From positions 1-64,000 of the IMG/VR virus record IMGVR_UViG_3300009184_000029: 64,000 nt of DNA, one strand, 5' to 3'. Below the pieces are notes generated by a model that saw nothing but the letters and a program-made list of their open reading frames with translations, did no database searches and had not been told where the DNA came from. The position numbers and the translations under genes were made by a program. Position 1 is the stretch's first letter; every line of letters begins with the position of its first letter. Positions 9,932-63,785 of this stretch are shown in pieces.

Positions 9932-9939
9932 TATTTATA
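9932..9939 (+). promoter_or_regulatory. Putative phage late promoter box TATTTATA
   Basis: 4 nt before ATG 9944; motif recurs before dozens of genes. Confidence 0.6.
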
Positions 9940-9943
9940 ATCA

Positions 9944-10912
9944 ATGAGACACAACAAAGAAACTCAAATTATTAATCATTTATTAGAAACATTCTCACCG
10001 AAAGAATTTTCAAATTTTAATCTATACCAAGAGTTAGGTGTATATACGTTAACTTTTGAGACAATTGACGACTTTAAAAATTCAACTAAAAGAGTTAAAA
10101 ATCTTATTAATTTTATTAATGAAAATTGGTATAACATAGGTAATAAAGATTTTGAATTTATACCTGTGTTAATTGATAAGGATATTATAAACGAAAATCA
10201 TGATAAAGTAAGTGATGAAGAAATAAGTAATAAAATATCAATTATAAACCGCAAAATTGACAGTTACCTCAAGTCAAAGTATCCTTGGTGGGGAAACAGT
10301 TATATTACATCATTTGAAGAAGCGACTCATAATAATAAATTAACTTTAATTATTGAAATTGATTTAGAATTAGATAAAAAATGGGTTGATAGAAGAATAT
10401 TAAAGATTTATGGTAGTGAAAGTAATCCTGAAGGATTTTATGACGAATTAGTTTTAAGTGATTTATTTACAACTAAAGAATATAAAAAAATTGAAGAAAA
10501 TATTGAAAACCTATTCACTGCAGTTTTCGGTAAAAAATTAAACTATACTGAATTTATAATTAACTGTAACATTGATTATGAACCAATTCATGAACAATTG
10601 ACTAATGATTATAAAAATTTAGAAACTAATTTACGTAAATATAAAAACGTCCAAATAGACCCTAAATCAGTATCACCTAGCAAAAATTTCCCATTATCTA
10701 AGTTTCAAAATAATTTAACTCCTGTTGATGAATTTATAAAAGAATTACAGAATACGGGATTTAAGTTTAAAAATTATTATATTAAAGATATGGAAAGTGG
10801 TATGGGATTTAATATTTTCCCAATATCCTACACAAATGGTAAATTAAATATGTCTTTTGAACCACTCTCACCCAATAAAAATGTTATGGTAACGTTTAAA
10901 AGTAATTTTTAA
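9944..10912 (+). CDS. Hypothetical protein
   Basis: 322-aa ORF with TATTTATA box. Confidence 0.65.
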   Translation: MRHNKETQIINHLLETFSPKEFSNFNLYQELGVYTLTFETIDDFKNSTKRVKNLINFINENWYNIGNKDFEFIPVLIDKDIINENHDKVSDEEISNKISIINRKIDSYLKSKYPWWGNSYITSFEEATHNNKLTLIIEIDLELDKKWVDRRILKIYGSESNPEGFYDELVLSDLFTTKEYKKIEENIENLFTAVFGKKLNYTEFIINCNIDYEPIHEQLTNDYKNLETNLRKYKNVQIDPKSVSPSKNFPLSKFQNNLTPVDEFIKELQNTGFKFKNYYIKDMESGMGFNIFPISYTNGKLNMSFEPLSPNKNVMVTFKSNF

Positions 10913-10934
10913 TATTTATTATTTAAATAAAAGA

Positions 10935-12083: not shown

Positions 12084-12103
12084 ATTCTCAAATATTTATT
12101 AGT

Positions 12104-13187: not shown

Positions 13188-13226
13188 AATGTAAAAAATT
13201 AATATGTCTAATACTATTTATTAATA

Positions 13227-14843: not shown

Positions 14844-15245
14844 TTATACAAAGACTACACTTTTTATACCCATAACATTATTTTCGGGGAAATATTGACT
14901 ATAAATATCCTGTATTATGTACTTACCATGTATTGACCATAATGGGTGAGGGAGAAATGACTCAAATAATTTATCTAATTCACGACTATAATAAATTTCA
15001 CCATTACGACTTATCTTATCTAAATATCTGTATGGTACGAACAATATTAATATTTTACCATCTGAACCAAGTAGAGCAATTTTATTGTTATCATCTTCAT
15101 TATATGATTTAATCATATTTGAGATTAAAGGAATCAGTTTATTACTTAGTTTAGAGTACTGATGCTCATATTCCTTATCACGCCAATCCCTCTCAATTTT
15201 TTCAGAAATTAATTTATATTGTGATTCGGTGATGATGTATTTCAT
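14844..15245 (-). CDS. Leader-bearing protein (MKYIITESQ)
   Basis: Leader class A; TATTTATA 5 nt upstream on minus strand. Confidence 0.7.
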   Translation of the reverse strand: MKYIITESQYKLISEKIERDWRDKEYEHQYSKLSNKLIPLISNMIKSYNEDDNNKIALLGSDGKILILFVPYRYLDKISRNGEIYYSRELDKLFESFLPHPLWSIHGKYIIQDIYSQYFPENNVMGIKSVVFV

Positions 15246-15264
15246 ATGATTATAAATACAAGTA

Positions 15265-15272
15265 TATTTATA
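15265..15272 (+). promoter_or_regulatory. Putative late promoter box TATTTATA (divergent partner at 15251-15258 on minus strand)
   Basis: Each box lies 5 nt from the ATG of its gene (15278 plus, 15245 minus). Confidence 0.6.
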
Positions 15273-15277
15273 ATAGT

Positions 15278-15892
15278 ATGAACCTAAAGGAATCCATAAG
15301 AAGAATATTAAAAGAAGAAAGGAATGTTAAAAACACATTAGTGAAACTTATTGATGAGTTTGGTATTGAACAAGCCTCCAAAATTACCGCGATTTCTATC
15401 ACAAAATTAGTTCAACTATCTGATGTAAAAATTAATAATGTAATTGCTAATAAACTATTAGTTGAAAATTTAAACAAGGGTAAATTAAAAGATACCTATA
15501 AACAATTCAAGATAGAATCAAGTATAAATGATGTTTTTTATTGGCAAGGTGAATTACAAACAGGACACTATACTGATAAATACACTGAATCAATTACAGC
15601 AATGGCGACACCATTTTGGGATGGTGAAGATTATACTCCTGTTGAGATTGAGTGGTTTACTCTATTGGACAGAAGTAAACCAAATGAAGTGAAGATGGTT
15701 GTTGAGACAGAGGGTTATGGAAGTTTTTACCAAACATTTAAAGATAAAACAAGTTTTGATAGTGTAGAAGAGTTATTTAATTGGTATGAAAAAGTTTATT
15801 TACCTGGTGTATATAACATAATAATGCACTTATTACCTGAAGTGCATATTTTTATTGATGAAAAATTAGATGAGGATAGAAGAGACAATTAA
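15278..15892 (+). CDS. Leader-bearing protein (MNLKESIRRILKEE)
   Basis: Leader class B; body resembles 24774. Confidence 0.7.
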   Translation: MNLKESIRRILKEERNVKNTLVKLIDEFGIEQASKITAISITKLVQLSDVKINNVIANKLLVENLNKGKLKDTYKQFKIESSINDVFYWQGELQTGHYTDKYTESITAMATPFWDGEDYTPVEIEWFTLLDRSKPNEVKMVVETEGYGSFYQTFKDKTSFDSVEELFNWYEKVYLPGVYNIIMHLLPEVHIFIDEKLDEDRRDN

Positions 15893-16316
15893 AAGAATAT
15901 TAAGAGAGGAAACTCAGATACCTTCACCGATTAGAAGAAGGGTGTCAAATTCGGATATCGAAGAAGCGTTCCTTATTTCATTAGATAGAATAGACGATGG
16001 ACGAAAATATAGTAAAATGTCAGTAATGAAAAATGTATCATTACAGACATTTGCCAAAATGGTAATTGATGATATGATTTCGGATTTAGAACAAGAATAT
16101 TTTAATGATGAGAACAGGATTTATTTTGATAATGACGAAACATATCACGAAGAAATTAGAGTACCACTTATGAACTATTTTAGTGATAGAATTAAGAAAA
16201 GATATGGCTCAAAAGACGAAAAAATTGTGTGTCAGGAATGCGGATGGTCGTGGAATTTATCTGATGGAGGAGATGACCCATATACTTGTCATCAGTGTTA
16301 CCCCGAAAACATGTAA
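15870..16316 (+). CDS. Leader-bearing protein with C-terminal zinc ribbon (CQECG...CHQC)
   Basis: IKRILREE leader; IRRRVS motif shared with 19597; CxxC-x14-CxxC. Confidence 0.7.
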   Translation: MRIEETIKRILREETQIPSPIRRRVSNSDIEEAFLISLDRIDDGRKYSKMSVMKNVSLQTFAKMVIDDMISDLEQEYFNDENRIYFDNDETYHEEIRVPLMNYFSDRIKKRYGSKDEKIVCQECGWSWNLSDGGDDPYTCHQCYPENM

Positions 16317-16400
16317 ATTAATATGAAACTACAAGATAGGATTATACAAATTTACAATAAAAGAGAGTGGACTTAGGACCGCTGTAGTTTAGGCTACATT

Positions 16401-16433
16401 AACCCCATTGAATTCGCTACTCAGTGGGGTTTT
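16401..16433 (+). terminator. Terminator-like hairpin, part of a larger structured intergenic element
   Basis: ACCCCATTGA / TCAGTGGGGT stem, 9-nt loop, followed by TTT. Confidence 0.65.
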
Positions 16434-16445
16434 CATTTGAACAAG

Positions 16446-16453
16446 TATTTATA
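16446..16453 (+). promoter_or_regulatory. Putative late promoter box TATTTATA heading the cassette operon
   Basis: 5 nt before ATG 16459. Confidence 0.6.
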
Positions 16454-16458
16454 ATAAA

Positions 16459-17349
16459 ATGAATCTACAAGAGAATATACAAAGAATTAAAGAAATGATG
16501 GGACTCATTACCGAAGAAAAAAAAGATAAAACCATTGTTCTTTTGGATGGTACCTCGTCTGCTGGTAAATCACATACACTTAAACATTTAAAGGCCGTTC
16601 CGTATTACGAAGCGAATGACCCAAACCAATTGGTTGTTATTGCAACTGATGATTTTAGTGGAACAGGTGAAGGTGAAGGTAAAGAAGGTGAAGAAAGAAG
16701 ATTAAAATTGGACCACCCCAATATAAGACAATGGGCGAAGGAAAATGAAGATGCTGGAGTTGTATCAGGAAAATATCGTAAAGATGGTAAAGATGTACCT
16801 AAAAATCCATACGAGAAAGAATATATTGAAGGGACTGACCCAAGATTATGGTATGTGGCTCAAGAAATTAAAACAGGTCCTTGGAAAAAAATTGTAATAG
16901 ACGATATTGGTAAAGGAGTATTACAATACTTACCTGGTGTTAAATTAAAATATATTCTGTTACACACTCCATTACATGTTCTTTTAAAGAATGTCTACGA
17001 AAGAAATGAAAGGGCGAAAAATGATAAGAACTTCAAAAATGATGATAGGGATATTAAAATGGTGTTAGACCAATACTCGGAGAAATATGAGGCAACAAAG
17101 TCCAAACCTGATATTACTAAAGGGGACCCAAAAACAATATTAACTAAGAGAGGTATTACAGATTTACTTGAGACAAATGGTGTGAAGAATAAACACATAG
17201 ATGAGTTTTTAAATAGTATAAATTTAACTAAAGATGGAGATTACTACATCAAAGTTAGGGATTCATATTTGACACCTGAAACACAATTAATTAATGTTGA
17301 TAGTAAAAGAACTGTCTATTTAAAAGATATTGATAAAGAATTAAAATGA
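16459..17349 (+). CDS. Leader-bearing P-loop kinase (chloramphenicol phosphotransferase-like)
   Basis: MNLQENIQRIKEMMGLITEE leader; LLDGTSSAGKS Walker A of CPT-like type; IVIDD; lid RNER. Confidence 0.7.
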   Translation: MNLQENIQRIKEMMGLITEEKKDKTIVLLDGTSSAGKSHTLKHLKAVPYYEANDPNQLVVIATDDFSGTGEGEGKEGEERRLKLDHPNIRQWAKENEDAGVVSGKYRKDGKDVPKNPYEKEYIEGTDPRLWYVAQEIKTGPWKKIVIDDIGKGVLQYLPGVKLKYILLHTPLHVLLKNVYERNERAKNDKNFKNDDRDIKMVLDQYSEKYEATKSKPDITKGDPKTILTKRGITDLLETNGVKNKHIDEFLNSINLTKDGDYYIKVRDSYLTPETQLINVDSKRTVYLKDIDKELK

Positions 17350-21302: not shown

Positions 21303-21602
21303 TTAATCAATAATCAATAAATTCTTAAATTCAAAACCTGTCTTACTCTCAACCCAATCTCCGATAATATTCATCGTTTCACCTCTATCTAAACTAAAAA
21401 AGGAGGATATCGTTTTTACAAAATCTTTTTTTATAAAACAATATGTTTGTTTGAAGGTGGATATTATGATTTCACGGTTTTCAATATTATAATTGTTCCA
21501 AAAGTGATAATCACCATCATTGTTTGTAACATAAAAGTTTTGTATATTAAGATAACGAAAGATTACTTTCTCTAACTGTGATTCTGTTATCAAGTATTTC
21601 AT
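21303..21602 (-). CDS. Paralogue-family protein (MKYLITESQ)
   Basis: Leader A; IFRYL...ISSFFSL...IIGDWVE. Confidence 0.75.
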   Translation of the reverse strand: MKYLITESQLEKVIFRYLNIQNFYVTNNDGDYHFWNNYNIENREIIISTFKQTYCFIKKDFVKTISSFFSLDRGETMNIIGDWVESKTGFEFKNLLIID

Positions 21603-21955
21603 ATATATAAATCAAGAAATTGTTCTAAGGTAATACCAAGAGGTCGAATACCTAAAAAGTTCATAAATTCAGATTCATCATAACTATCACCTCTATCATC
21701 AAGAATCAATGGGTGGTTTGAACTATAATTCATTTGATATAACACCTTATGATTATCATCCAATTCTATAAGATACATCGGACCATAGTTATCCATCAAA
21801 CTTCTCCTTAATAGACCATCGTAAGTAAAATGGAAATCAAAATCATTCAGTATTCCACGTATACTTGGGTCAAGCTCCACACGACCTGTGAGGTCAATAT
21901 TAAACTTATCCTTAATAAATGTTTTTAATTTAGATTCGGTGATTAATAGTTTCAT
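21599..21955 (-). CDS. Leader-bearing protein (MKLLITESK)
   Basis: Start reassigned; AATATTTATAA box upstream. Confidence 0.65.
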   Translation of the reverse strand: MKLLITESKLKTFIKDKFNIDLTGRVELDPSIRGILNDFDFHFTYDGLLRRSLMDNYGPMYLIELDDNHKVLYQMNYSSNHPLILDDRGDSYDESEFMNFLGIRPLGITLEQFLDLYI

Positions 21956-21968
21956 GTTATTATAAATA

Positions 21969-22301
21969 TTAATTAGACGGAATCTGCATCCACTCAGATT
22001 TAATATTATTGGCCCACAAACAAAAATCAATATCTACCTTTAAGGTCTCCCCAACCCATCTACCGATAGTTTCCCTAGCATCATAACCTTGCATAGAAAA
22101 AAAAGAAGCAACCTCACCAATTAATCCTGTATATATGACACATTTACTATCCTTTTTAAAATATCTAATCTGAGCATATTCATCACCTTCTGAATTTACA
22201 AAGTATACACCATCACCCTTCTCAATCTGAATGAAGTCCTGATTATCCAAGTACTTAAAGATTATTCTATCTAATTGTGATTCTGTAATTAAGTATTTCA
22301 T
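21969..22301 (-). CDS. Paralogue-family protein (MKYLITESQ)
   Basis: Close paralogue of 24409; ends WV+12aa+10aa+MQIPSN. Confidence 0.8.
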   Translation of the reverse strand: MKYLITESQLDRIIFKYLDNQDFIQIEKGDGVYFVNSEGDEYAQIRYFKKDSKCVIYTGLIGEVASFFSMQGYDARETIGRWVGETLKVDIDFCLWANNIKSEWMQIPSN

Positions 22302-22308
22302 AATTTAA

Positions 22309-22587
22309 TTAATCCGAGTGTAAGAATTTAAGTAATGCTCTAATATATTGGGAACGTTTCTCATAGAATTCAGTTTCATTACCATATTGTAAAAACTCCT
22401 CACGTCTATGTCTATCAATGAAATCTTCAATTAATCCATAAATGTGGTCATCCCTGTCAGCAGAATCTTCAAAATCTTCATCATCCATAGCGTAGTTATA
22501 ATCATCCTTAAGCGCTTTCAATTCATCTATAGAAAACCTTCTAAGTAAAAATATGTCTAACTGTGATTCGGTGATAAGGTATTTCAT
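22309..22587 (-). CDS. Leader-bearing acidic protein (MKYLITESQ)
   Basis: Start reassigned; overlapping TATCTTTG and TATTTATA boxes upstream. Confidence 0.65.
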   Translation of the reverse strand: MKYLITESQLDIFLLRRFSIDELKALKDDYNYAMDDEDFEDSADRDDHIYGLIEDFIDRHRREEFLQYGNETEFYEKRSQYIRALLKFLHSD

Positions 22588-22689
22588 TATATATAAATAC
22601 AAAGATAGGGACAAAGTTGAACTATATATATTGGGTTAATAATTTCATAAGAATATGATAATATGGTTTGTTCTTTACTTTCTATACTT

Positions 22690-23400: not shown

Positions 23401-24107
23401 GATACAGAACAATTATAATGAGTGATTTACATCTTGGCGCAAAACAATCACAGACGGACAAGATAATAAAGTTCTTGGAAGAAAACCAAACGGACAAGTT
23501 AATACTAAACGGAGATATCATAGATGGTTGGGCACTCAAAGGTAGTGGTAAGTGGACAAAGGATTGCACCAAGATATTCAGGAAGTTTATGAAGATGTCG
23601 GAGAAGGATACAAAGGTAATTTATATAAGGGGAAACCACGATGACTTCCTAAAAGATTTCATTCCGTTTAAGTTAAACAATATAAGGATTGTAAGGAAGT
23701 ATGTACATGAAGGAATGGACGGAAGAACATACTTTTGTTTTCACGGGGATGTATTGGATTTCGTTATAATGGAAGCAAGATGGTTGGCAGTAATCGGTGG
23801 ATGGTCATATGATATTGTCATTAAGTTTAATACTCTATACAACAAAATAAGAAAGTGGTTTAACTTACCATATCATTCACTGGCAAATACAATAAAACAA
23901 TCTGTTAAAGGGGCGATTAACTTTGTATCTGATTTCGAAGAAAACGCGAAAGGTTTAACAAAACAGAAGGGATATGATGTTGCGGTGTGTGGACATATTC
24001 ATCACCCGAAGTTAGAGAATGACTATATGAATTCAGGAGACTTTTGTGAGAACTCTACATGTCTTGTAGAAGATTATAATGGGGAGTGGAAAATAATTAC
24101 TATATAA
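23391..24107 (+). CDS. UDP-2,3-diacylglucosamine hydrolase-like metallophosphoesterase (LpxH-like)
   Basis: SDLHLG, LNGDIIDGW, RGNHDD, FHGD, CGHIHHP, YMNSGD. Confidence 0.85.
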   Translation: MEMRYRTIIMSDLHLGAKQSQTDKIIKFLEENQTDKLILNGDIIDGWALKGSGKWTKDCTKIFRKFMKMSEKDTKVIYIRGNHDDFLKDFIPFKLNNIRIVRKYVHEGMDGRTYFCFHGDVLDFVIMEARWLAVIGGWSYDIVIKFNTLYNKIRKWFNLPYHSLANTIKQSVKGAINFVSDFEENAKGLTKQKGYDVAVCGHIHHPKLENDYMNSGDFCENSTCLVEDYNGEWKIITI

Positions 24108-24396
24108 TTATAACTTCTTTAACTCTTCTATCCAAAGTATTCTCAACCCATCTAGCGATAACATATTTAGCATTATCAAATTCTATAGAGAAGAAATTTT
24201 TAATCTCATCAATTAACTCAAAACTTATTACACAGTCACCACTTCTAAAGTATTGGATTAATGAGTCCTTATATTCATCACCCTCTGAATTAACGAAGTA
24301 TATTGTATTTCCTTTTTTAATCTGAATAAAGTCCTGATTGTTCAAGTATATGAAGATTACTCTATCTAATTGTGATTCTGTGATTAAGTATTTCAT
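24100..24396 (-). CDS. Paralogue-family protein (MKYLITESQ)
   Basis: Close paralogue of 24409; ends RWVENTLDRRVKEVIII. Confidence 0.8.
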   Translation of the reverse strand: MKYLITESQLDRVIFIYLNNQDFIQIKKGNTIYFVNSEGDEYKDSLIQYFRSGDCVISFELIDEIKNFFSIEFDNAKYVIARWVENTLDRRVKEVIII

Positions 24397-24408
24397 TATT
24401 GATAAATA

Positions 24409-24741
24409 TTAGTTAGATGGTATTCTCAACATATATCCACGGTGGAAAGATACAAAAGGGGTGTCAGTGACCCTCATTTGGAGGGTATTCTCAACCCACC
24501 TACCAATAACTTGTTCAGAATCAGATTCATCCAAAGAAAAGAAGGAAGAAATTTCATCCATTAATTTGTAATATATCCCACACCAACCATCATCTTTATC
24601 ATATCTGATTTGAGCATATTCATCACCTTCTGAATTGGCGAAGTATATATTATCACCCTTTTCTATCGGAATAAAATCTTGGTTGTCAAGATACCTAAAG
24701 ACTATTTTATCTAATTGTGATTCGGTGATAAGATATTTCAT
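24409..24741 (-). CDS. Paralogue-family protein (MKYLITESQ) whose 3' end overlaps a CRISPR-like repeat-spacer unit
   Basis: Ends RWVENTLQMRVTDT-PFVSFHRGYM-LRIPSN. Confidence 0.8.
   Translation of the reverse strand: MKYLITESQLDKIVFRYLDNQDFIPIEKGDNIYFANSEGDEYAQIRYDKDDGWCGIYYKLMDEISSFFSLDESDSEQVIGRWVENTLQMRVTDTPFVSFHRGYMLRIPSN
24413..24495 (+). CRISPR. Minimal repeat-spacer-repeat unit with a type VI-B-like direct repeat (degenerate partial repeat, ~30-nt spacer, full repeat)
   Basis: Full repeat 24460-24495 GGTGTCAGTGACCCTCATTTGGAGGGTATTCTCAAC with ACCCTC/GAGGGT stem; partial repeat ending GGTATTCTCAAC at 24430; intervening spacer 24431-24459/60. Confidence 0.6.
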
Positions 24742-24760
24742 ATGATAATAAATACAATTA

Positions 24761-24768
24761 TATTTATA
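24761..24768 (+). promoter_or_regulatory. Putative late promoter box TATTTATA
   Basis: 5 nt before ATG 24774. Confidence 0.6.
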
Positions 24769-24773
24769 ATATT

Positions 24774-25229
24774 ATGAATCTACAAGAAAACGTAAGAAGA
24801 ATATTAAGGGAAGAATACACCGCAAAACAAATGAAGTTATTAACTCTGGCAAGTAAGGTGGGGTTACTAAAGGTAGGGAAAATGCTCGGAGGTGTAGAAG
24901 ACCTTATAAATGTGTTAGGTGATGAGTTCCTTACAACAAACAATAAGATTAAGATTATTAAGGAAATAGTAGAAACAACCGATGATGAATATATTACACT
25001 AATGGACATGAATGAAAATCCAATAGTTCTCAAGGATGAAGACGGTAAACTTTCACAAATAGAAATGATATATAGAGAAGATGTTGCAGTGTTCCATTAT
25101 GGTGGATATAAATACTCACAAGATTTAGGTGAAAGTTATATGTCTTATGAAGAACTACCAAAATATGTATTAGATGATATTTTTGATATGGTATTAGATT
25201 TCTATACAGGTACTTTAGAGAATAACTAA
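24774..25229 (+). CDS. Leader-bearing protein (MNLQENVRRILREE)
   Basis: Leader B; GLLKVGKMLGG segment resembles those in 15278 and 19597. Confidence 0.7.
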   Translation: MNLQENVRRILREEYTAKQMKLLTLASKVGLLKVGKMLGGVEDLINVLGDEFLTTNNKIKIIKEIVETTDDEYITLMDMNENPIVLKDEDGKLSQIEMIYREDVAVFHYGGYKYSQDLGESYMSYEELPKYVLDDIFDMVLDFYTGTLENN

Positions 25230-25688
25230 TTATTGATTTAATACCTCTTCCACCCCTCTTGTGAAGGGTCCAAAATATGATTCCGTTGTAGATACCTTAT
25301 GATTTAATACCTCTTCCACCTTCCAAGGAACACGAACTTTAACATCGCACGTTGTGGATACCTTATGATTTAAGACCTCTTCCACCAAATGGGCATCATT
25401 GAAAAACGCATCACCAGTTGTGGATACCTTATGATTTAATACCTCTTCCACCCAAGAAGATAGAACAGGACTAAAATCACCTGAACTCATAGAGAATATT
25501 TTAAAAAACGAATTAAAAAAATCATATCTCCACCATAAAGTACCTGACTTATCAAGTTCGAAGTACCAATGTTTATTATCCCTATTAATGAACCATATTG
25601 ACCCATTATAAGGAATAATCTCACAATCACCCAACTCTTTATATAGGTGTTTAAAAATAACTTGTTTAAATCTATCTGTAATAACCAT
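25230..25688 (-). CDS. Paralogue-family protein with in-frame CRISPR-like repeat tail (VEEVLNHKVSTT x3 + VEEVLNQ)
   Basis: N-terminal ~80 aa align by eye to the family; host-type promoter upstream. Confidence 0.75.
   Translation of the reverse strand: MVITDRFKQVIFKHLYKELGDCEIIPYNGSIWFINRDNKHWYFELDKSGTLWWRYDFFNSFFKIFSMSSGDFSPVLSSWVEEVLNHKVSTTGDAFFNDAHLVEEVLNHKVSTTCDVKVRVPWKVEEVLNHKVSTTESYFGPFTRGVEEVLNQ
25234..25452. CRISPR. CRISPR-like mini-array: 3 full 36-bp repeats + 1 truncated repeat, three unrelated 30-bp spacers
   Basis: Repeat GTTGT(G/A)GATACCTTATGATTTAA(T/G)ACCTCTTCCACC at 25285, 25351, 25417; partial at 25234-25254; spacers 25255-25284, 25321-25350, 25387-25416. Confidence 0.7.
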
Positions 25689-25692
25689 AGTA

Positions 25693-25700
25693 CAAATATA
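25693..25700 (-). promoter_or_regulatory. Bacteroidota -7 box TATATTTG
   Basis: 4 nt upstream of ATG 25688. Confidence 0.65.
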
Positions 25701-25925
25701 GTAAGAAATTAAGAAATAAACAAACTCATTCCCCCATCCCCACTTTCAGTGGTCGTTCCATTCCCCTTCGGGTCATTACACTAATGGGTACATTCATTTG
25801 TTTACTTCTTAATTTCCCCCATTGTATGAATCTATAATAAACGTACAACACTAATCTATAATAATCCCCCATAATGAAAGACACATACTATGAAGGGACA
25901 TATAGTTATACTGTTAATGGTATTG

Positions 25926-26059
25926 TACCCCATCGGGATAATGAAATACCCTAAAGGGTATGTTACACGATAAGAATATACCGTTAGGGTATAATACCGA
26001 TAGGTATAAAATGAAGGGGACAATACGAAACATATCTGTTATGTCAGGTTTAACCTGAC
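25926..26059. repeat. Cluster of short inverted repeats in a long non-coding region
   Basis: ATACCCTAAAGGGTAT (25946), TATACCGTTAGGGTATA (25977), ATACCGATAGGTAT (25994), GTCAGGTTTAACCTGAC (26043). Confidence 0.7.
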
Positions 26060-26520
26060 TATAGTGATATGAAACATATGTCCCACAATTTACCACCATA
26101 ATAATTGTCCATATCATGTGTCTATATATGAAAGGGAAATCTTAGAAACCCCGTTGAAGGACACTATAATACACTATTTTCGTTGAAGATTGTAACGACT
26201 AAAGTCTGTCCACGCCACTTTGTTAGTGTAATCTATTTTTCTCTGGAAAATGTATATAGTAAAAAAAACCCTTCTCACACTATCATGAGGACCATTTTTT
26301 TCACTTTTCATATAATCAAAAACACCCCTCACATATATGTCAGTGGGAAAAAGTGGGAACATTTACCTATGGATAATATACACATATTAACCTATATTTA
26401 TTATAGTTGTAGTGTCTAAAAGTGGTCAAGGGGATTAACCCTTAACGCGAGCTCGACTGACATTTTGACAAAATCAAATTTTTTAACAAATAAAGTTATT
26501 AACAATTTCCCCCTGACAGT

Positions 26521-26784
26521 ATGACAAACAACAATTCCATACATGACACGTTAAGAAACACGAGGGTTTTAACTGACACTTTAAGGGACCATAAGGTGGT
26601 TTACTTATATTATAATGATGAGAAGGTGGGAAGGATGGAGTTTGGGATTGTCCATTCCCCTCTCCAAGGGAATCAGTATGTGTTAAGAAGTTATAAGATA
26701 GAGAGTGACTACTCAGAGTTATTCAAGGGTGAGGAGAGTCCCATTATAACTCTGACCACCTATGTTAGGACACTAATGGTTTAA
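26521..26784 (+). CDS. Hypothetical protein
   Basis: ORF converging on 26765. Confidence 0.45.
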   Translation: MTNNNSIHDTLRNTRVLTDTLRDHKVVYLYYNDEKVGRMEFGIVHSPLQGNQYVLRSYKIESDYSELFKGEESPIITLTTYVRTLMV

Positions 26785-27157
26785 CTTGTTTCCACACCAC
26801 ACTTTTGTATTTTACTTCATTACCTCTTGCTTCCACTTCGAAGGGTGAGTTGTGGTATCCATTTTTATTAACAGATGATGCGTAGTTTTTCTTCAATCCC
26901 TTTTGTATGTGATGGGTGTATTCATGGATGACGGTACGAATAAACTTATCAACATTAACACAGGTCGATGGGTTGATGATGATGGTGTAATCATAGTCGT
27001 ACTGACCATAACAATTTGTTAACCCATTTCTAATTTTTAACTTAGGGGTTGGTTTGTTCCCGTGACCTAATATTTCACGAGTCACCTTAATGGTTTCCAT
27101 CCCCAAGGTTCTTAGTTGTTTAACACTATATGTATTTAAGTTATCTTTGAGTTTCAT
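26765..27157 (-). CDS. SprT-like zinc metallopeptidase
   Basis: CYGQY...IIINP...TVIHEYTHHIQ HExxH; SPFEVEAR. Confidence 0.75.
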   Translation of the reverse strand: MKLKDNLNTYSVKQLRTLGMETIKVTREILGHGNKPTPKLKIRNGLTNCYGQYDYDYTIIINPSTCVNVDKFIRTVIHEYTHHIQKGLKKNYASSVNKNGYHNSPFEVEARGNEVKYKSVVWKQVKPLVS

Positions 27158-27158
27158 A

Positions 27159-27578: not shown

Positions 27579-27603
27579 AGTGGTGTGGTGTTTAATTGTT
27601 TTA

Positions 27604-27611
27604 CAAATATA
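27604..27611 (-). promoter_or_regulatory. Bacteroidota -7 box TATATTTG
   Basis: Consensus match upstream of 27578. Confidence 0.6.
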
Positions 27612-27948: not shown

Positions 27949-27956
27949 TATATTTG
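27949..27956 (+). promoter_or_regulatory. Bacteroidota -7 box TATATTTG
   Basis: 4 nt before ATG 27961. Confidence 0.65.
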
Positions 27957-27960
27957 TGGT

Positions 27961-28420: not shown

Positions 28421-28536
28421 CGTGAATAAAATTTTATGGAATTTTTTTCTATAATGGGACCCCCTCTTTTAAAAAGGTGGGTAAAGTAAAAAATAAATTT
28501 TTGGAAAATTTTTGTATTTATTATTAAATTAGTAAT

Positions 28537-30662: not shown

Positions 30663-30702
30663 CATTTAACCCCCTTTTTATTTTTAACGTATTTATTGTA
30701 GT

Positions 30703-31067: not shown

Positions 31068-31089
31068 ATTTTATGATATATTTATTATT

Positions 31090-32641: not shown

Positions 32642-32686
32642 AAATTTTTTTATTTTATAATATATTTATATATAAATTAAAATATT

Positions 32687-33157: not shown

Positions 33158-33181
33158 ATTTGGTAAGGTATTTATTATAAT

Positions 33182-34147: not shown

Positions 34148-34169
34148 GTTTTTAGAGGTATTTATTTAT

Positions 34170-34457
34170 ATGAAAGTCATAATTACAGAATCTCAGGTTG
34201 AAAAAGTAATCAATGTTTTTTCTAAGTTTTTGAATAAAGATTCACGTAAAGGTGTATGTAATGTCACGATTGATTATGACGATATGATGGATAGGTTTGT
34301 TTTAAATATTTTTTTTGATAGAATGTATTTGGTCAATTTAGATAGTGGTGGTAAACAAACAAATTTTATAGTTAAAGTTGTGAATGAGTATGGTAACTTG
34401 TTTAGAAGTTTATCAAGTAGAAATCCATTAATTTATCAACACTACGATGATTGTTAA
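34170..34457 (+). CDS. Leader-bearing protein (MKVIITESQ)
   Basis: Start reassigned; GGTATTTATT upstream. Confidence 0.7.
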   Translation: MKVIITESQVEKVINVFSKFLNKDSRKGVCNVTIDYDDMMDRFVLNIFFDRMYLVNLDSGGKQTNFIVKVVNEYGNLFRSLSSRNPLIYQHYDDC

Positions 34458-35176: not shown

Positions 35177-35188
35177 GTATTTATATAT

Positions 35189-37207: not shown

Positions 37208-37241
37208 ATTATATAAGATATTTATATTATATCAAAAAAAC

Positions 37242-39441: not shown

Positions 39442-39501
39442 AAACTAAATAATATATTTATAAATAATAAATATATTTTTTTTCAAAAAAAACAATAATA
39501 A

Positions 39502-39882: not shown

Positions 39883-39910
39883 CAATGTATTTATAATAAA
39901 ACGTATAACT

Positions 39911-40940: not shown

Positions 40941-41086
40941 AACCAATTATAATATTTTTTTAGTATTAGTTAAAGTAATTTACAAAATTAATTTTGGAAA
41001 TTAACACTAAAACTATAATATTTTTATTTCTATCCTTGTTAATAATGATAGTCCAAGTTTTTTGGAAATAATAATATTTATTAATT

Positions 41087-43202: not shown

Positions 43203-43214
43203 ATGTATAAATAT

Positions 43215-46240: not shown

Positions 46241-46280
46241 TGTATTTATATAAATATAAATAATTTTTAAATATTTTTTT

Positions 46281-47586: not shown

Positions 47587-47654
47587 ACACTAAATTTAAT
47601 AATAATACTTTTTTTTGTCAAATAGATATGTCAATATATTTATAAATAAAAAAT

Positions 47655-48468: not shown

Positions 48469-48542
48469 AACCAATTACGGTTATTTTTTTTCATTTTACA
48501 AATATATGTAATAATTCTTTTAAAAATACTATTTATTAGAAA

Positions 48543-48812: not shown

Positions 48813-48853
48813 TTTTTTTACTTTTTATAATATTTATAGTATAAACAAACATT

Positions 48854-52193: not shown

Positions 52194-52207
52194 TATTTAT
52201 TAAAGAT

Positions 52208-56741: not shown

Positions 56742-56829
56742 TTAAAAAGTGGATTATAAAAAATACAGTTTTCTTATTAACTTTAACCCTTATATTAGGT
56801 TATATCGTTAGAAAGTTAATTTAAGAAAT

Positions 56830-56906
56830 GCCCCCATAGCTCAGCTGGATAGAGCAACAACCTTCTAAGTTGTGGGTCACACGTTCGAATCGTGTTGGGG
56901 GTACCA
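56830..56906 (+). tRNA. tRNA-Arg(UCU)
   Basis: Acceptor GCCCCCA/TGGGGGT, D-arm AGCTCAGCTGGATAGAGC, anticodon arm ACAAC-CTTCTAA-GTTGT, TTCGAAT loop, encoded CCA. Confidence 0.97.
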
Positions 56907-56912: not shown

Positions 56913-57632
56913 TTAATGAGGAGCACTCACCAAGTAGTAATCACCTGTTTCTAATTCAGGTAGATAAGATTTTTTCACTTGGTTACCATAATTACTAACC
57001 ATAATAGATTTGTTCTTTTCCTTATCATGTATGATGTCAGAATCAATTCTTTCGTCTTCATCATATAATAATAATTTATCCATTAAATTTTTATCGTAAG
57101 ATATATAATACATTCCTCGTGTTTCATATTCATCGTAGTCATCAGTATATCCGTTTCCATCACATTCATAACACGTTTCATTACCTTGTCCTCCACAATT
57201 ATCACAAGTTACTTCACCATCCCCATCACAGTATCCACAATTATCCCCCTCATCGTCAGTACCATCTCCATTACATTCTGAACATTCAATTTCACCACTT
57301 GAGTCACAATCATTACAGTTTACGGTTCCATCACCACCACAATATTCACAACTTATTTGAGTGTAATTTGACTCTATTTCAGCAATATCAAATCTAAAAA
57401 TATTACTAACTATCGTTTCATAATATTTTTCATAATTTAAATCATCAAATGATATTGATAAAAGAAAACAAATAACAGATAACTCTTTATCATTAAAATT
57501 TCTAAAAAAATTTTGTAATAGATTATCTTTTCTAAAAAAATGAAATATATCATCTGCGGTTTTAATCTTATTTTTCAATAAGATTAATTTAACTCTATTA
57601 TTTACGTATTTTAATAGTTTATCCTTTTCCAT
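56913..57632 (-). CDS. Protein with DnaJ-type CxxCxGxG zinc-finger repeats, no J domain
   Basis: CEYCGGDG, CNDCDSSG, CSECNGDG, CGYCDGDG, CDNCGGQG, CYECDGNG. Confidence 0.75.
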   Translation of the reverse strand: MEKDKLLKYVNNRVKLILLKNKIKTADDIFHFFRKDNLLQNFFRNFNDKELSVICFLLSISFDDLNYEKYYETIVSNIFRFDIAEIESNYTQISCEYCGGDGTVNCNDCDSSGEIECSECNGDGTDDEGDNCGYCDGDGEVTCDNCGGQGNETCYECDGNGYTDDYDEYETRGMYYISYDKNLMDKLLLYDEDERIDSDIIHDKEKNKSIMVSNYGNQVKKSYLPELETGDYYLVSAPH

Positions 57633-57649
57633 ATATTTATAAATATATG
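57630..57649. promoter_or_regulatory. Perfect 20-bp palindrome holding two divergent TATTTATA boxes and both start codons
   Basis: CATATATTTATAAATATATG equals its own reverse complement. Confidence 0.75.
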
Positions 57650-59000: not shown

Positions 59001-59394
59001 TGGTGGAGATGCCGGGGGTCGAACCCGGGTCCAAAAAAGTTTACCATAAAACACTACACGCTTAGGTTATTGTTTTTCTAAACAATCCAAAACTTCACAA
59101 TTCCCTTATTTTATAGTGGTTCGGTTTACTGAGAACTAATCCTCCACTTTGTTTCTTTTTGGGTAGAAACCACACCACAACTACGACTTCTGTTGCAAGG
59201 TTGTATGTCTGCCGACCCCTAGTAGGTTAATCCTAGATTAAGCTACAGATACTTCTTCAGTACGGATTAAACCGATTGTAGAAAGTTTGTTGATAACGTT
59301 GCCGTTTGTAATTTGAACCAGTTTAACGGAGTTAATTCAGCTCCGGCGTGCGTTTTATGACTAATCCATTCCTGTCAAAGCCAAAAACATCCCC
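59001..59394 (-). ncRNA. ssrA: tmRNA; predicted tag reading frame 59303-59238 GNVINKLSTIGLIRTEEVSVA*
   Basis: 5' GGGGATGTTTTTGGCTTTGACAGG; 3' CCCGGGTTCGACCCCCGGCATCTCCACCA; acceptor GGGGATG/CATCTCC with G-U; 394 nt. Confidence 0.93.
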
Positions 59395-59415: not shown

Positions 59416-59423
59416 CAAATATA
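59416..59423 (-). promoter_or_regulatory. Bacteroidota -7 box TATATTTG for the tmRNA
   Basis: About 21 nt upstream of the mature tmRNA 5' end. Confidence 0.6.
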
Positions 59424-59467
59424 TAAATATATTCTTAAATACACAACTATTTATTTTAAAATATTAC

Positions 59468-60549: not shown

Positions 60550-60557
60550 TATCTTTG
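60550..60557 (+). promoter_or_regulatory. Bacteroidota -7 box TATCTTTG
   Basis: 4 nt before ATG 60562. Confidence 0.65.
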
Positions 60558-61374: not shown

Positions 61375-61401
61375 AAAAAGGGGAAGTTATTCCCCTTTTT
61401 T
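61373..61401. terminator. Bidirectional terminator
   Basis: AAAAAAAGGGGAA-GTTA-TTCCCCTTTTTT. Confidence 0.8.
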
Positions 61402-63432
61402 CTTTCTTGTTTTCTTTTGTTTTTCAGAGTCTTTTATTAATACCTCTTCTGATTCATTAATAGAAATTTCATATTCTTTATCTATTACGATATTATTTTT
61501 CAAAACTTCATCTGAAATAAAATCTTCGATTTTTTCTTGTATTGCTCTTTTTAGAGGTCTTGCTCCATACACTTCATCAAATCCAATTTTTGAAATAAAG
61601 TCGATTACAGTTTGGTCAAATTTAATTTTATACCCAAGACTTTCCAATCTATTCTTTAATATAGAAACTTCAGAATAAACAATTTTTTGAACGTCACTAT
61701 CTTGTAAGGTATTAAATATAATTGTTTCATCTAATCTGTTAATGAACTCAGGTGCAAAATAATTTTTAAGTTCTTTTGTTAAAACACTCTTTTTTGCCTC
61801 TTCATTTTTATATACGTTATTACTTGTACCGAATCCAATACCTGAACCAAACTCCTGCATTTTTTTAACTCCAATATTTGAGGTCATGATAATTAAACAG
61901 TTTTTAAAATTAATCTTTCTACCAAAACTATCTGTCATATACCCCTCATCTAAAAGTTGTAATAACGCTGAGAATATATCTTTATGTGCTTTCTCAACCT
62001 CATCGAATAATACAACTGAATATGGTTTTGTTTTAACTTGTTCAGTTAATTGACCACCTTCTTCATACCCAATATAACCAGGAGGTGAACCTATTAATCT
62101 TGAAACACTGTGTTTTTCTTGGAATTCACTCATGTCAACCCTGATTAAATTATTATCACTTCCAAAAATTTGTTTTGCAAGTTCTTTGGCGAGTAATGTT
62201 TTACCAACACCTGTCGAACCTAAAAATATGAATGAACCAATTGGTTTGTTAGGGTCTTTAATACCTAAACGATTTCTTCTTATCGATTTTGAAATTTTTT
62301 GAATCGCTTCTTTTTGACCAATGACAGATTTATTTAATTCTTCTTCCAAATTAATTAAAGCATTTTTATCATCCAAAGTTAATTTTGTCAAAGGTATTTT
62401 TGTCATCATTGATACTACCTCATAAACTAATTCATCTGAAATATCTTTTCTATTATTCAATAAATCCTGTTCAAATTTCTTTTTTTCAGTTTCTAATTGT
62501 CCAATAATCTTTTTTTCTTTGTCCCTAAGACTTGCGGCCTCTTCATAATTTTGTTTCTTAACAACTGTTATTTTGAGTTGTCTAATTTCCTGAGCTTTCT
62601 TTTTTAATTCCTCAATAATTTCAGGATTCTTAACATCAACCTGTGCTCTTGCTCCAACTTCGTCTAATATATCAAACGCTTTATCAGGAAATTCTCTATC
62701 TGTAATATATCTTTCCGCTAAATCGACACAAATTTGTAAAATTTCATCAGAATATTTTACTTTATGGTAATTTTCATATTTGTCCCTAACATTTTTTAAT
62801 ATTTGTAAAGTTTCATCTTTTGTGGATGAATTAACAATTACTTTTTGAAATCTTCTATCTAAAGCACCATCCTTTTCAATTTGTTTTTTGTATTCATCTA
62901 AAGTTGTTGCACCAATACATTGAATTTCTCCTCTTGATAATGCAGGTTTTAAAATATTAGATGCGTCTAAGGTACCTGAAGCGTTACCCGCTCCAACTAT
63001 AGTATGAATCTCATCAATGAATAATATTACGTTTGGATTTGCTTGAATTTCCTCCAATATCACCTTCAATCTTTCTTCAAATTGTCCTCTATATTTAGTA
63101 CCGGCAACAACTGAATTTAATTCTAACGATAAAATTCTTTTATCTAATAGATTTCGTGGGCAATCTCCTTCAAATATTTTCATTGCCAATCCCTCAACAA
63201 TTGCGGTTTTACCACACCCTGGTTCTCCAATAATAATTGGGTTATTCTTTTTACGTCTAGATAAAATTTGCGCAATTCTAACTATTTCAGTCTCCCTACC
63301 AATTACAGGGTCCAATTTACCTTCTTCCGCAAGTTTGATTAAATCCTTACTGAAGTTATCTAAAACTGGTGTTTGTGAACCACTATCATTATTTTTTGAA
63401 GGTTTAGAACCTTCCCCGATTGAATCTGTCAT
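61387..63432 (-). CDS. clpC: ClpC-like Hsp100 AAA+ ATPase lacking the N-terminal repeat domain
   Basis: LDPVIGR, GEPGCGKT, KYRGQFEER, FIDEIH; UVR-like NYEEAASLRDKE; GSTGVGKT, DEVEKAH, IGF loop, YGARPLKRAI. Confidence 0.9.
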   Translation of the reverse strand: MTDSIGEGSKPSKNNDSGSQTPVLDNFSKDLIKLAEEGKLDPVIGRETEIVRIAQILSRRKKNNPIIIGEPGCGKTAIVEGLAMKIFEGDCPRNLLDKRILSLELNSVVAGTKYRGQFEERLKVILEEIQANPNVILFIDEIHTIVGAGNASGTLDASNILKPALSRGEIQCIGATTLDEYKKQIEKDGALDRRFQKVIVNSSTKDETLQILKNVRDKYENYHKVKYSDEILQICVDLAERYITDREFPDKAFDILDEVGARAQVDVKNPEIIEELKKKAQEIRQLKITVVKKQNYEEAASLRDKEKKIIGQLETEKKKFEQDLLNNRKDISDELVYEVVSMMTKIPLTKLTLDDKNALINLEEELNKSVIGQKEAIQKISKSIRRNRLGIKDPNKPIGSFIFLGSTGVGKTLLAKELAKQIFGSDNNLIRVDMSEFQEKHSVSRLIGSPPGYIGYEEGGQLTEQVKTKPYSVVLFDEVEKAHKDIFSALLQLLDEGYMTDSFGRKINFKNCLIIMTSNIGVKKMQEFGSGIGFGTSNNVYKNEEAKKSVLTKELKNYFAPEFINRLDETIIFNTLQDSDVQKIVYSEVSILKNRLESLGYKIKFDQTVIDFISKIGFDEVYGARPLKRAIQEKIEDFISDEVLKNNIVIDKEYEISINESEEVLIKDSEKQKKTRKKKGE

Positions 63433-63521
63433 AAATATTTTTTTAAAATTTTAGTAATAAAATTCATAAAATTCAATGATTAACTTTCTTAAAAAAATTA
63501 TTATATTTAAAATAAAAAAGT

Positions 63522-63764
63522 ATGGCAATCAAAAGAGAAATAATCGAAGGGACAAAAATAATTTGTGAAATCGAATCATCGAACATTGAAAAGACTACCT
63601 ATGATACCCAATCTAAGAAATTAGTAGTCGAGTTTAAAAATAATGTTGAGTACGAATATGAGGACGTACCACATCAATTGTATACACAGTTTAGAATATC
63701 TGAATCTCAAGGGGCTTTTTTCAATAAAAACATTTCAAAAAATTTTAAATATAAAAGATTGTAA
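63522..63764 (+). CDS. KTSC domain protein
   Basis: ESSNIEKTTYD...LVVEFKNN.EYEYEDVP...ESQGAFFNKNI. Confidence 0.88.
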   Translation: MAIKREIIEGTKIICEIESSNIEKTTYDTQSKKLVVEFKNNVEYEYEDVPHQLYTQFRISESQGAFFNKNISKNFKYKRL

Positions 63765-63785
63765 TAAATCGTATATTTATAATTT

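What the first reader, a model, noticed from the sequence alone, without database searches (positions are those of the whole stretch)
9932..63781. Phage-specific TATTTAT(A) box just before start codons: likely late promoter producing near-leaderless mRNAs
Seen: TATTTATA or TATTTATT precedes the first gene of most leader-bearing units on both strands. Spacing to the ATG is often 3-5 nt (9932, 15265, 15251 minus, 16446, 24761, 35178, 57634, 63774) and longer in some. It is absent before most internal genes of operons. It is the exact reverse complement of the T4 late promoter TATAAATA, yet it lies in sense orientation here. Inference: a single-box promoter for a phage sigma factor, with transcription starting at or near the ATG.
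Basis: partly seen in the sequence, partly recalled or inferred. Interest (0 to 1): 0.6.

Follow-up and report, generated by a model that had tools for sequence, protein, structure and literature searches.

The report
Phage late promoter box beside start codons

Summary
TATTTAT occurs 170 times in the 222.8-kb phage genome. Thirty-one copies start 11-14 nt before a called start codon (0.36 expected), and about 20 more lie 13-18 nt upstream. The reverse complement almost never occupies that place. The box precedes 1 of 119 tightly coupled internal genes but about half of unit-first genes.

It is the top upstream 7-mer and several copies follow terminator hairpins. It is kept upstream of the terminase gene in relatives and at a syntenic site in two ~51-52% GC relatives. 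One copy precedes a tmRNA gene.

The phage has a T4-type capsid gene. It also encodes a conserved 243-aa sigma-like protein with a sigma-2 fold and weak gp55-family similarity. Two cultured relatives, Flavobacterium phage immuto and Microcystis phage Mel-JY01, carry this protein and the box before terminase and tail tube (immuto also portal and sheath). Neither has a detectable RpoD-like sigma, gp33 or gp45.

In Mel-JY01 the box lies 25-40 nt upstream, mostly ahead of GGAG ribosome sites, so it acts in transcription, not translation.

No start site was mapped, so "leaderless" rests on geometry alone. This is a new variant of T4-type late promoters.

The parts
1990..1997 (+). box TATTTATA, 8 nt before ATG 2006, directly after a terminator-like hairpin
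9932..9939 (+). box TATTTATA, 4 nt before ATG 9944 (322 codons)
10913..10920 (+). box TATTTATT, 14 nt before ATG 10935
12093..12100 (+). box TATTTATT, 3 nt before ATG 12104 (acetyltransferase-like)
13215..13222 (+). box TATTTATT, 4 nt before ATG 13227
15251..15258 (-). box TATTTATA, 5 nt before ATG 15245 (minus strand); divergent pair with 15265
15265..15272 (+). box TATTTATA, 5 nt before ATG 15278
16446..16453 (+). box TATTTATA, 5 nt before ATG 16459; a terminator hairpin ends 16 nt upstream
21961..21968 (-). box TATTTATA, 5 nt before ATG 21955 (small paralogue, N-terminus MKLLITES)
22592..22599 (-). box TATTTATA, 4 nt before ATG 22587 (small paralogue, N-terminus MKYLITES)
24401..24408 (-). 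box TATTTATC, 4 nt before ATG 24396
24747..24754 (-). box TATTTATT, 5 nt before ATG 24741; this cassette is a copy of 15245/15278
24761..24768 (+). box TATTTATA, 5 nt before ATG 24774
28515..28522 (+). box TATTTATT, 14 nt before ATG 28537
30690..30697 (+). box TATTTATT, 5 nt before ATG 30703
31079..31086 (+). box TATTTATT, 3 nt before ATG 31090
32663..32670 (+). box TATTTATA, 16 nt before ATG 32687
33169..33176 (+). box TATTTATT, 5 nt before ATG 33182; terminator hairpin 33129-33154 lies upstream
34159..34170 (+). two overlapping boxes (TATTTATT and TATTTATA) at ATG 34170, after hairpin 34123-34145
35178..35185 (+). box TATTTATA, 3 nt before ATG 35189; it fills the 12-nt gap after the upstream stop codon
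36824..36831 (+). box TATTTATT, 3 nt before ATG 36835
37219..37226 (+). box TATTTATA, 15 nt before ATG 37242; terminator 37183-37206 lies upstream
39459..39466 (-). box TATTTATA, 17 nt before ATG 39441 (minus strand)
39888..39895 (+). box TATTTATA, 15 nt before ATG 39911
41075..41082 (+). box TATTTATT, 4 nt before ATG 41087 (468 codons)
43206..43213 (-). box TATTTATA, 3 nt before ATG 43202 (minus strand)
46249..46262 (-). two boxes, 8 and 14 nt before ATG 46240 (minus strand)
47637..47644 (+). box TATTTATA, 10 nt before ATG 47655
48530..48537 (+). box TATTTATT, 5 nt before ATG 48543
48831..48838 (+). box TATTTATA, 15 nt before ATG 48854
52194..52201 (+). box TATTTATT, 6 nt before ATG 52208; it fills a 14-nt gap
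57634..57645 (.). two overlapping boxes on opposite strands (57634-57641 plus, 57638-57645 minus) inside a 14-bp palindromic spacer between divergent start codons 57632 and 57647
59422..59429 (-). box TATTTATA, 27 nt upstream of the 5' end of a tmRNA gene (59394..59001, minus strand); it overlaps a host-type TATATTTG at 59416-59423
59448..59455 (+). box TATTTATT, 12 nt before ATG 59468
63774..63781 (+). box TATTTATA, 4 nt before GTG 63786; no in-frame ATG in the 31 codons read downstream (to 63880)

Best explanation
R-TATTTAT-W is the -10-type, single-element promoter of a phage-specific (middle/late) transcription class.

Proposed mechanism:
- Host RNA polymerase core is redirected to the box by a phage-encoded, highly divergent sigma factor. 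This is a 243-aa protein at genome 86823-87554 (minus strand, outside the window), called sigma243 here. No -35 element is needed.
- Transcription would start about 4-6 nt downstream of the 8-mer.
- In this phage, whose genes lack Shine-Dalgarno sites (probably a Bacteroidota host), about 35 boxes lie 3-6 nt before the start codon. Those messages would begin at or within 1-2 nt of the AUG, that is, leaderless. About 25 more boxes would give an A-rich leader of roughly 8-13 nt.

What is shown and what is inferred:
- Shown: the box, its position and orientation, its conservation, the sigma-like fold, and the co-occurrence of box and sigma243.
- Inferred: that sigma243 reads the box, the exact start site, leaderless translation, and the time class.

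Rough odds for the separate steps: phage-specific promoter about 0.85; sigma243 as its reader about 0.6; start at or next to the AUG for the short-gap class about 0.55.
For: Position and orientation:
- 31 observed against 0.36 expected at -14..-11. The reverse complement has 2 there. The box is the top upstream k-mer.
- It precedes 1 of 119 tightly coupled genes but about half of unit-first genes.
- A terminator hairpin lies within 55 nt upstream of 7 of 53 boxes, against 2 of 184 other gene starts.
- No -35-like conservation is seen.

Late genes:
- The box precedes the terminase gene and a tail-spike-like gene.
- It also precedes the gene directly upstream of the gp23-type capsid gene.

Conservation:
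- The 7-mer is invariant in 23 distinct box-bearing terminase upstream regions (selected for holding the box) at 70-80% protein identity. The flanks, the hairpins and the distance to the ATG (5, 7 or 14 nt) all vary.
- Positional enrichment recurs across 78 related loci.
- A syntenic box directly downstream of the sigma243 gene is kept in all 7 relative lineages examined, with sigma at 30-41% identity to the window's, as it is here. This includes contigs of 52.5% and 50.9% GC, where it is the only TATTTA on either strand.

Not tied to translation:
- A box precedes a tmRNA gene.
- In Microcystis phage Mel-JY01 the box lies 25-40 nt upstream of late genes, mostly with a GGAG ribosome site in between.

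Sigma243:
- Weak hit to phrog_234, the T4 gp55 family.
- hhalign against gp55 gives E 1e-4 over 103 columns.
- The family profile hits SigA region 2 among solved structures.
- The AF2 model has pLDDT 91. All of the top 50 structural matches are sigma factors, and the sigma-2 domain aligns at rmsd 2.5-3 A.
- It is a conserved core gene with more than 1000 representative clusters.

Co-occurrence:
- The complete genomes of Flavobacterium phage immuto and Mel-JY01 both carry sigma243 and the box before terminase, tail tube and other structural genes (immuto also portal and sheath; Mel-JY01's portal-position gene is unannotated). Neither has a gene with sigma-70 region 4.

Geometry:
- In Flavobacterium johnsoniae the -7 element spans -12..-5 with 4-5 nt to the start site (PMC6847099).
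- This phage also has six host-type TAHHTTTG-N4-ATG sites.
Against: - No 5' ends were mapped. The single RNA library available gave only short contigs at depth 2-5. One of them (16366-16516) runs across the box at 16446, which could be read-through or DNA carry-over.
- Sites with only 3 nt between the 8-mer and the ATG (8 sites) need a start closer than either T4 geometry (5 nt) or the host's (4-5 nt) would predict.
- The sigma243 gene itself lies inside a long operon whose only recognised promoter is a box. How it is first expressed is therefore unexplained.
- Similarity of sigma243 to gp55 is weak: probability 55%, and PDB E 0.29.
- Part of the enrichment comes from duplicated cassettes.
- The host is inferred, not known.
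Confidence: 0.68

Rival explanations
1. The box is a variant of the host's own -7 promoter element. Host primary sigma reads it and no phage factor is needed.
For: The box matches TAHHTTTG at 6 of 8 positions (T-12, A-11, H-10, H-9, T-8, T-6) and lies in the same register relative to the ATG as the six host-type TAHHTTTG-N4-ATG sites. The -33 element is weak in flavobacteria anyway.
Against: - It lacks the nearly invariant T-7 and G-5. Position 8 is G in only 1 of 61 sites.
- The same box precedes late genes in a cyanophage whose host belongs to a different phylum, Cyanobacteria.
- It co-occurs with sigma243 across hosts.
- It is kept in roughly 51-52% GC relatives.
Confidence: 0.1
2. The phage's RpoD-like sigma reads the box, not sigma243. 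This is the 266-aa protein at genome 207897-208697, with regions 1.2, 2 and 4.
For: It is a strong, conserved sigma-70-family gene. It lies downstream of a host-type promoter, which fits early expression.
Against: Flavobacterium phage immuto and Microcystis phage Mel-JY01 have the box before late genes but no gene with sigma-70 region 4. A region-4 sigma would be expected to need a -35 element, and none is conserved.
Confidence: 0.1
3. The box acts at the RNA or translation level, either as a Kozak-like or unstructured AU-rich initiation signal or as the operator of a translational regulator.
For: It lies very close to start codons in a genome without Shine-Dalgarno sites: 16 of 237 genes have an SD-like 4-mer. 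Bacteroidota tune initiation by upstream A/U content.
Against: - The spacing is bimodal and varies between orthologues (5, 7 or 14 nt).
- In Mel-JY01 it lies 25-40 nt upstream, mostly ahead of GGAG ribosome sites.
- It precedes a tmRNA gene.
- It follows terminators.
- It is absent before 118 of 119 internal genes, which also need translation.
Confidence: 0.04
4. The box is the binding site of a phage transcription factor (activator or repressor) that overlaps promoters of another kind.
For: The outer triplets TAT/ATA form an inverted repeat. Overlapping boxes occur in divergent spacers (57634-57645).
Against: - Orientation bias is strong, 31 against 2.
- Position 8 is A or T, so the palindrome is not kept.
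- No other promoter motif is enriched upstream of these genes.
- Many spacers of 12-15 nt have room for nothing else.
Confidence: 0.06
5. It is chance: an AT-rich word made common by low G+C content and by duplicated cassettes.
For: The genome is 30.7% G+C. The overall count in the window is only 56 against 41.5 +/- 7. Some sites are paralogous copies.
Against: - Most control words of the same composition show about 2% at this position against 21% for the box; only words overlapping the box reach 6-7%.
- The box is conserved in 51-52% GC relatives, where it is the only copy in the contig.
- The enrichment recurs in 78 related loci and in two cultured phages.
Confidence: 0.01

Closest known systems
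T4-type late promoter (TATAAATA at -13..-6, read by gp55 with gp33 and the gp45 clamp)
   Same: - A single 8-bp AT-rich element with no -35 partner.
- It lies before late structural genes of a phage with a gp23-type capsid protein.
- 6 of 8 bases are identical in the same orientation.
- A phage-encoded sigma-2-domain protein has its best PHROG match in the gp55 family.
   Different: - The central AA is replaced by TT. All T4-like variants described in PMC1524935 keep TAAATA.
- No gp33 or gp45 was detected here or in two complete relatives, with T4 as positive control.
- In phage immuto the replication genes are annotated as family A polymerase, DnaB and DnaG, not the T4 type.
- Sigma243 is longer, at 243 aa, and its C-terminal half aligns with sigma-4 of two-domain sigmas.
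- Many boxes abut the start codon.
Bacteroidota primary-sigma promoter (-33 TTTG / -7 TAnnTTTG)
   Same: Same register, -12..-5, with about 4-5 nt to the start. T-12, A-11, T-8 and T-6 are shared. The phage also carries genuine TAHHTTTG sites, six of them exactly 4 nt before an ATG.
   Different: A replaces T at -7 and A/T replaces the nearly invariant G at -5. The box also occurs in a cyanophage.
Leaderless mRNAs of Actinobacteria, Deinococcus and archaea (a -10-type box about 6-7 nt before the AUG)
   Same: The promoter element lies immediately upstream of the start codon, and there is no Shine-Dalgarno site.
   Different: - Here it is driven by a phage-specific box.
- The setting is a host lineage where leaderless mRNAs are a small minority: 5.5% in F. 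psychrophilum, and 13% with leaders of 10 nt or less in F. johnsoniae.
- Start sites are not mapped.

Membership tests
T4-type late transcription system | A single -10-region element without a -35 element | tested here: met
   The logo of 61 sites shows no conserved upstream element, only R at -1 and W at position 8.
T4-type late transcription system | Consensus TATAAATA, or at least the TAAATA core | tested here: not met
   The consensus is TATTTAT(A/T). ATAAATA in sense orientation occupies the position only twice. Described T4-like variants keep TAAATA.
T4-type late transcription system | A gp55 homologue | tested here: inconclusive
   Sigma243 against phrog_234 gives E 8.5e-4 and 5e-5. hhalign against gp55 gives probability 55%, E 1e-4. 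The PDB profile search gives gp55 at E 0.29 but SigA at 0.0016. The fold is clearly that of a sigma factor.
T4-type late transcription system | The gp33 co-activator | tested here: not met
   phrog_254 finds nothing in this record, which is 76% complete. It also finds nothing in the complete genomes of immuto and Mel-JY01, while T4 scores 1.6e-33. A fast-evolving small protein could still be missed.
T4-type late transcription system | The gp45 sliding clamp | tested here: not met
   PF02916 and phrog_223 find nothing here. phrog_223 finds nothing in the two complete relatives.
T4-type late transcription system | The element lies before late (virion and packaging) genes | tested here: met
   - Here: the terminase gene, a tail-spike-like gene, and the gene directly upstream of the gp23-type capsid gene.
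- In immuto: terminase, portal, sheath, tube and tail fibre genes.
- In Mel-JY01: terminase, the unannotated gene just downstream of it and tube genes.
- Timing itself was not measured.
Sigma-70 family (for sigma243) | A sigma-2 domain fold | tested here: met
   Model residues 20-125 align to sigma-E and RpoS/SigA domain 2 at rmsd 2.5-3 A over 91-101 residues, Z about 9.4. All top 50 matches are sigma factors.
Sigma-70 family (for sigma243) | Binds RNA polymerase core and directs initiation | not testable with these tools
It needs biochemistry.
Bacteroidota sigma-A promoter | Nearly invariant T-12, A-11, T-8, T-7, T-6 and G-5 | tested here: not met
   The box has A at -7 and A/T at -5. The other four positions match.
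Leaderless mRNA | The transcript's 5' end lies at, or within a few nt of, the start codon | not testable with these tools
   Only assembled contigs of one metatranscriptome were available. The geometry is compatible, with 24 of 35 short-class sites having a 4-5 nt gap.

The most novel reading that the evidence does not exclude
A broad clade of phages with T4-type capsids uses a stand-alone two-domain sigma that needs neither gp33 nor a sliding clamp and reads TATTTAT. The clade includes freshwater jumbo phages, Flavobacterium phage immuto and Microcystis phage Mel-JY01. In the Shine-Dalgarno-less, Bacteroidota-type lineage the leaders have collapsed. About a third of transcription units would then be truly leaderless. 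One example is a 14-bp bidirectional promoter in which two boxes overlap on opposite strands.
Probability: 0.35. Interest if true: 0.7.

Novelty: new variant of a known kind. Interest (0 to 1): 0.55.

Why it matters
- It gives a ready promoter model for a large and abundant group of uncultured freshwater and marine phages: about 450 terminase relatives in IMG/VR and more than 1000 clusters of the sigma.
- It assigns a function to a ubiquitous 'hypothetical protein'.
- It suggests that late transcription in phages with T4-type capsids can be uncoupled from the replication clamp.
- If the short-gap sites are truly leaderless, the phage would be a natural test case for leaderless translation in Bacteroidota, whose ribosomes do not use Shine-Dalgarno pairing. 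It would also supply compact promoter parts for flavobacterial genetics.
- Two cultured relatives make all of this directly testable.

Tried and rejected
- A megablast of 5 kb and a tblastn of a large protein against the phage collection found nothing. The capsid protein was needed to reach cultured relatives.
No start sites could be read, and one contig crosses the box at 16446. This is not decisive either way.
- The search for related loci with two distant sigma homologues found no IMG/VR loci. The look-up of encoding contigs was used instead.
- Host inference from the ClpC-like ATPase failed. The best cellular matches, at 45-50% identity, are spread over Actinomycetota, Bacteroidota, Verrucomicrobiota and others.
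- No phage RNA polymerase was detected with Rpb2_6 or the T7-type family. The latter search had no positive control.
- A sigma-70-type promoter scan of 25-38 kb was no better than shuffles, 76 against 73.8.
No verdict.
- Function searches of about 30 box-preceded small genes in PHROGs and Pfam mostly returned nothing.


Full report
**What the window is.** The window is the first 64 kb of a single 222,829-bp contig with 30.7% G+C. It is an IMG/VR viral genome from a freshwater metagenome, estimated 76% complete. Nearly identical sigma genes lie on contigs of about 294 kb. It encodes a T4 gp23-type major capsid protein at 76576-78378 (PF07068, E 9e-64) and a large terminase at 68853-70601. It has about 450 terminase relatives in IMG/VR. 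Only 16 of 237 called genes have a Shine-Dalgarno-like 4-mer upstream. My gene list is a simple codon-usage caller, so start codons are 'first start in the open frame'.

**The observation.** All cited sites exist, and the 8-mer lies 3-5 nt from the start codon. The site at 63774 precedes a GTG.

- The total count is only mildly raised: 56 against 41.5 +/- 7. The placement is what stands out.
- Of 170 TATTTAT in the genome, 75 lie in the 5.5% of DNA that is intergenic.
- 31 start at -14..-11 from a called start (0.36 expected), and about 20 more lie at -18..-25.
- The reverse complement occupies the short position twice.
- Most control words of the same composition reach about 2% at this position, against 21% for the box; words that overlap the box reach 6-7%.
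- De novo, TATTTAT is the most enriched upstream 7-mer: 58 of 114 regions against 1.8 expected. No independent second motif appears.
- The logo is R-TATTTAT-W with nothing conserved further upstream.
- By context, the box precedes 1 of 119 genes that lie 10 nt or less from the previous gene. It precedes 16/30, 15/31 and 4/19 genes with longer gaps, and 17/36 divergent genes. 'Most' unit-first genes is therefore really about half.
- Some sites are copies. Small paralogous genes (N-termini MKYLITESQ..., MNLQENI...) carry the box with them, and the divergent cassette 15245/15278 is duplicated at 24741/24774.

**Is it a promoter?** Several independent lines say so.

1. Terminator-like hairpins end within 55 nt upstream of 7 of 53 boxes, against 2 of 184 other starts. 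Before the terminase gene there is room for nothing except the box between hairpin and ATG.
2. Conservation. In 23 distinct box-bearing terminase upstream regions (70-80% protein identity) the 7-mer is invariant; they were selected for holding the box, but the flanks, the hairpin sequence and the distance to the ATG (5, 7 or 14 nt) all vary. Relatives without the box have the gene fused into the upstream operon. Across 78 related loci the same positional enrichment recurs, there with the 12-16-nt gap predominating.
3. A box lies directly downstream of the sigma243 gene, before a conserved gene of about 120 aa. It is kept there in all 7 relative lineages examined, whose sigma is 30-41% identical to the window's. 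In contigs of 52.5% and 50.9% G+C it is the only TATTTA on either strand. The deep core is TATTTA(T/A/C).
4. A box lies 27 nt upstream of a tmRNA gene (59394..59001, minus strand; Rfam 133 bits). There it overlaps a host-type TATATTTG.
5. In Microcystis phage Mel-JY01 the box lies 25-40 nt before the terminase, tail-tube and other late genes, mostly with GGAG ribosome sites in between. The box therefore acts independently of the start codon. Only the lineages without Shine-Dalgarno sites have pulled it against the ATG.
6. In Flavobacterium phage immuto (cultured, annotated) TATTTAT is again among the top upstream words. It precedes terminase, portal, sheath, tube, tail fibre and tail spike genes and a gene just upstream of the baseplate cluster, mostly 10-27 nt before the ATG and sometimes 2-5 nt.

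**Which factor reads it?** No phage RNA polymerase was detected. Two sigma-like genes exist, both outside the window.

- One is RpoD-like: 207897-208697, regions 1.2, 2 and 4. It lies downstream of a host-type promoter.
- The other, sigma243 (86823-87554, minus strand), is annotated only as hypothetical in public data.
  - Its best PHROG is the T4 gp55 family (E 8.5e-4 and 5e-5).
  - hhalign of a 69-member family profile against gp55 gives E 1e-4, probability 55%.
  - The same profile hits SigA region 2 (E 0.0016) and gp55 (E 0.29) among solved structures.
  - Its AF2 model (pLDDT 91) matches sigma factors exclusively in the top 50 rows. The sigma-2 domain aligns at rmsd 2.5-3 A, and the full length aligns to two-domain sigmas such as sigma-E.
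- The two complete cultured relatives both carry sigma243 (E 2e-35 and 4e-29) but no gene with sigma-70 region 4.
- gp33 and gp45 were not found here or in the two relatives, with T4 as positive control for gp33. Immuto's replication genes are annotated as family A polymerase, DnaB and DnaG. The clamp-coupled T4 mechanism is therefore not supported.

**Leaderless?** This is geometry only.

- In F. johnsoniae the -7 element TAHHTTTG spans -12..-5, with 4-5 nt to the start site (PMC6847099).
- This phage has six TAHHTTTG-N4-ATG sites, so even its host-type promoters appear set for leaderless messages.
- The box matches TAHHTTTG at 6 of 8 positions in the same register, and T4's TATAAATA (-13..-6; PMC1524935) at 6 of 8.
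- Gaps after the 8-mer are 3 nt (8 sites), 4 nt (12), 5 nt (12) and 6 nt (3). Twenty-four of 35 would start exactly at, or 1 nt before, the A of the ATG. The 3-nt sites are a tight fit.
- The second class would give A-rich leaders of roughly 8-13 nt.
- Leaderless mRNAs are rare in flavobacteria: 5.5% in F. psychrophilum (PMC9723704). If real, the phage is unusual in this respect.
- The only RNA data were assembled contigs of one lake metatranscriptome at depth 2-5. They show that the phage is present in the library but give no ends, and one contig crosses the box at 16446.

**Comparison and novelty.**

It follows from the palindromic frame TATnnATA; in sense the box is TATAAATA with the two central bases changed.
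- I found no paper describing this motif.
- A jumbo-phage survey notes that 'group 2' phages, including Bacteroidota phages, encode minimal and RpoD-like sigmas (PMC7824862).
- I rate this as a new variant of a known kind, a T4-like single-box late promoter. It has a plausibly different activation mechanism and an unusual leaderless layout.

**Open points.** The start sites, the timing, how sigma243 is first expressed, and the host are all unresolved. A Bacteroidota host is inferred from three things: the absence of Shine-Dalgarno sites, the TAHHTTTG sites, and the Flavobacterium phage relative.

Noticed in passing
window 59001-59394 (minus strand): A full-length phage-encoded tmRNA (Rfam RF00023, 133 bits, ends in CCA) that ARAGORN does not report. 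Its likely tag reading frame ends ...EEVSVA, which is unusual. It is preceded by overlapping phage-type and host-type promoter boxes.
   Followed up: partly
window 25686-25693(-), 27949-27956(+), 28913-28920(+), 32297-32304(+), 33605-33612(+), 60550-60557(+): Host-type Bacteroidota -7 elements (TAHHTTTG) lie exactly 4 nt before an ATG, several with a TTG or TTTG about 20 nt upstream. This suggests that early genes are also made as leaderless mRNAs. The same layout occurs in a 52.5% GC relative (L093, 9161, minus strand).
   Followed up: partly
window 57632-57647: A 14-bp perfectly palindromic spacer (ATATTTATAAATAT) lies between two divergent start codons. It holds two boxes overlapping on opposite strands, a minimal bidirectional promoter if both work.
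   Followed up: no
window 14844-15892, 21599-22587, 24100-25229, 30703-31014, 34170-34457: Families of small paralogous genes with conserved N-termini (MKYLITESQ..., MNLQENI...), each with its own box. DNA contig depth in metagenomes spikes at these cassettes (15080-15480, 16280-16680), so they are repeated in many related phages. PHROGs and Pfam give no function.
   Followed up: partly
genome 86823-87554 (minus strand) and 207897-208697 (plus strand), outside the window: Two phage sigma genes. One is a divergent 243-aa sigma that public data call hypothetical, with more than 1000 representative clusters. The other is a 266-aa RpoD-like sigma. The first lies next to glycosyltransferase genes in a conserved order.
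   Followed up: yes
Flavobacterium phage immuto, L185 16800-26300 (record 66.8-76.3 kb): A second, long conserved motif lies before many small genes: GTTGC, about 17 nt, TATATTTAGGTATCAATAATTAAAACA. It looks like that phage's early promoter plus a shared leader. A similar TATATTAGGTTATA lies upstream of the tRNA-Arg in the window (56790-56805).
   Followed up: no
window 56830-56906 (+), 61387-63432 (-), 3864-4970 (+), 37618-38811 (+): tRNA-Arg(TCT); a ClpC/ClpB-like double AAA+ ATPase (45-50% identity to cellular Clp ATPases of many phyla); a thymidylate synthase matched in two stretches (possible insertion); and an M23 peptidase fused to a chitinase-class-I/lysozyme-like domain.
   Followed up: no
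window 25700-29400: A stretch of low coding density with several strong terminator hairpins on both strands and host-type promoters. No Rfam family matches it.
   Followed up: partly
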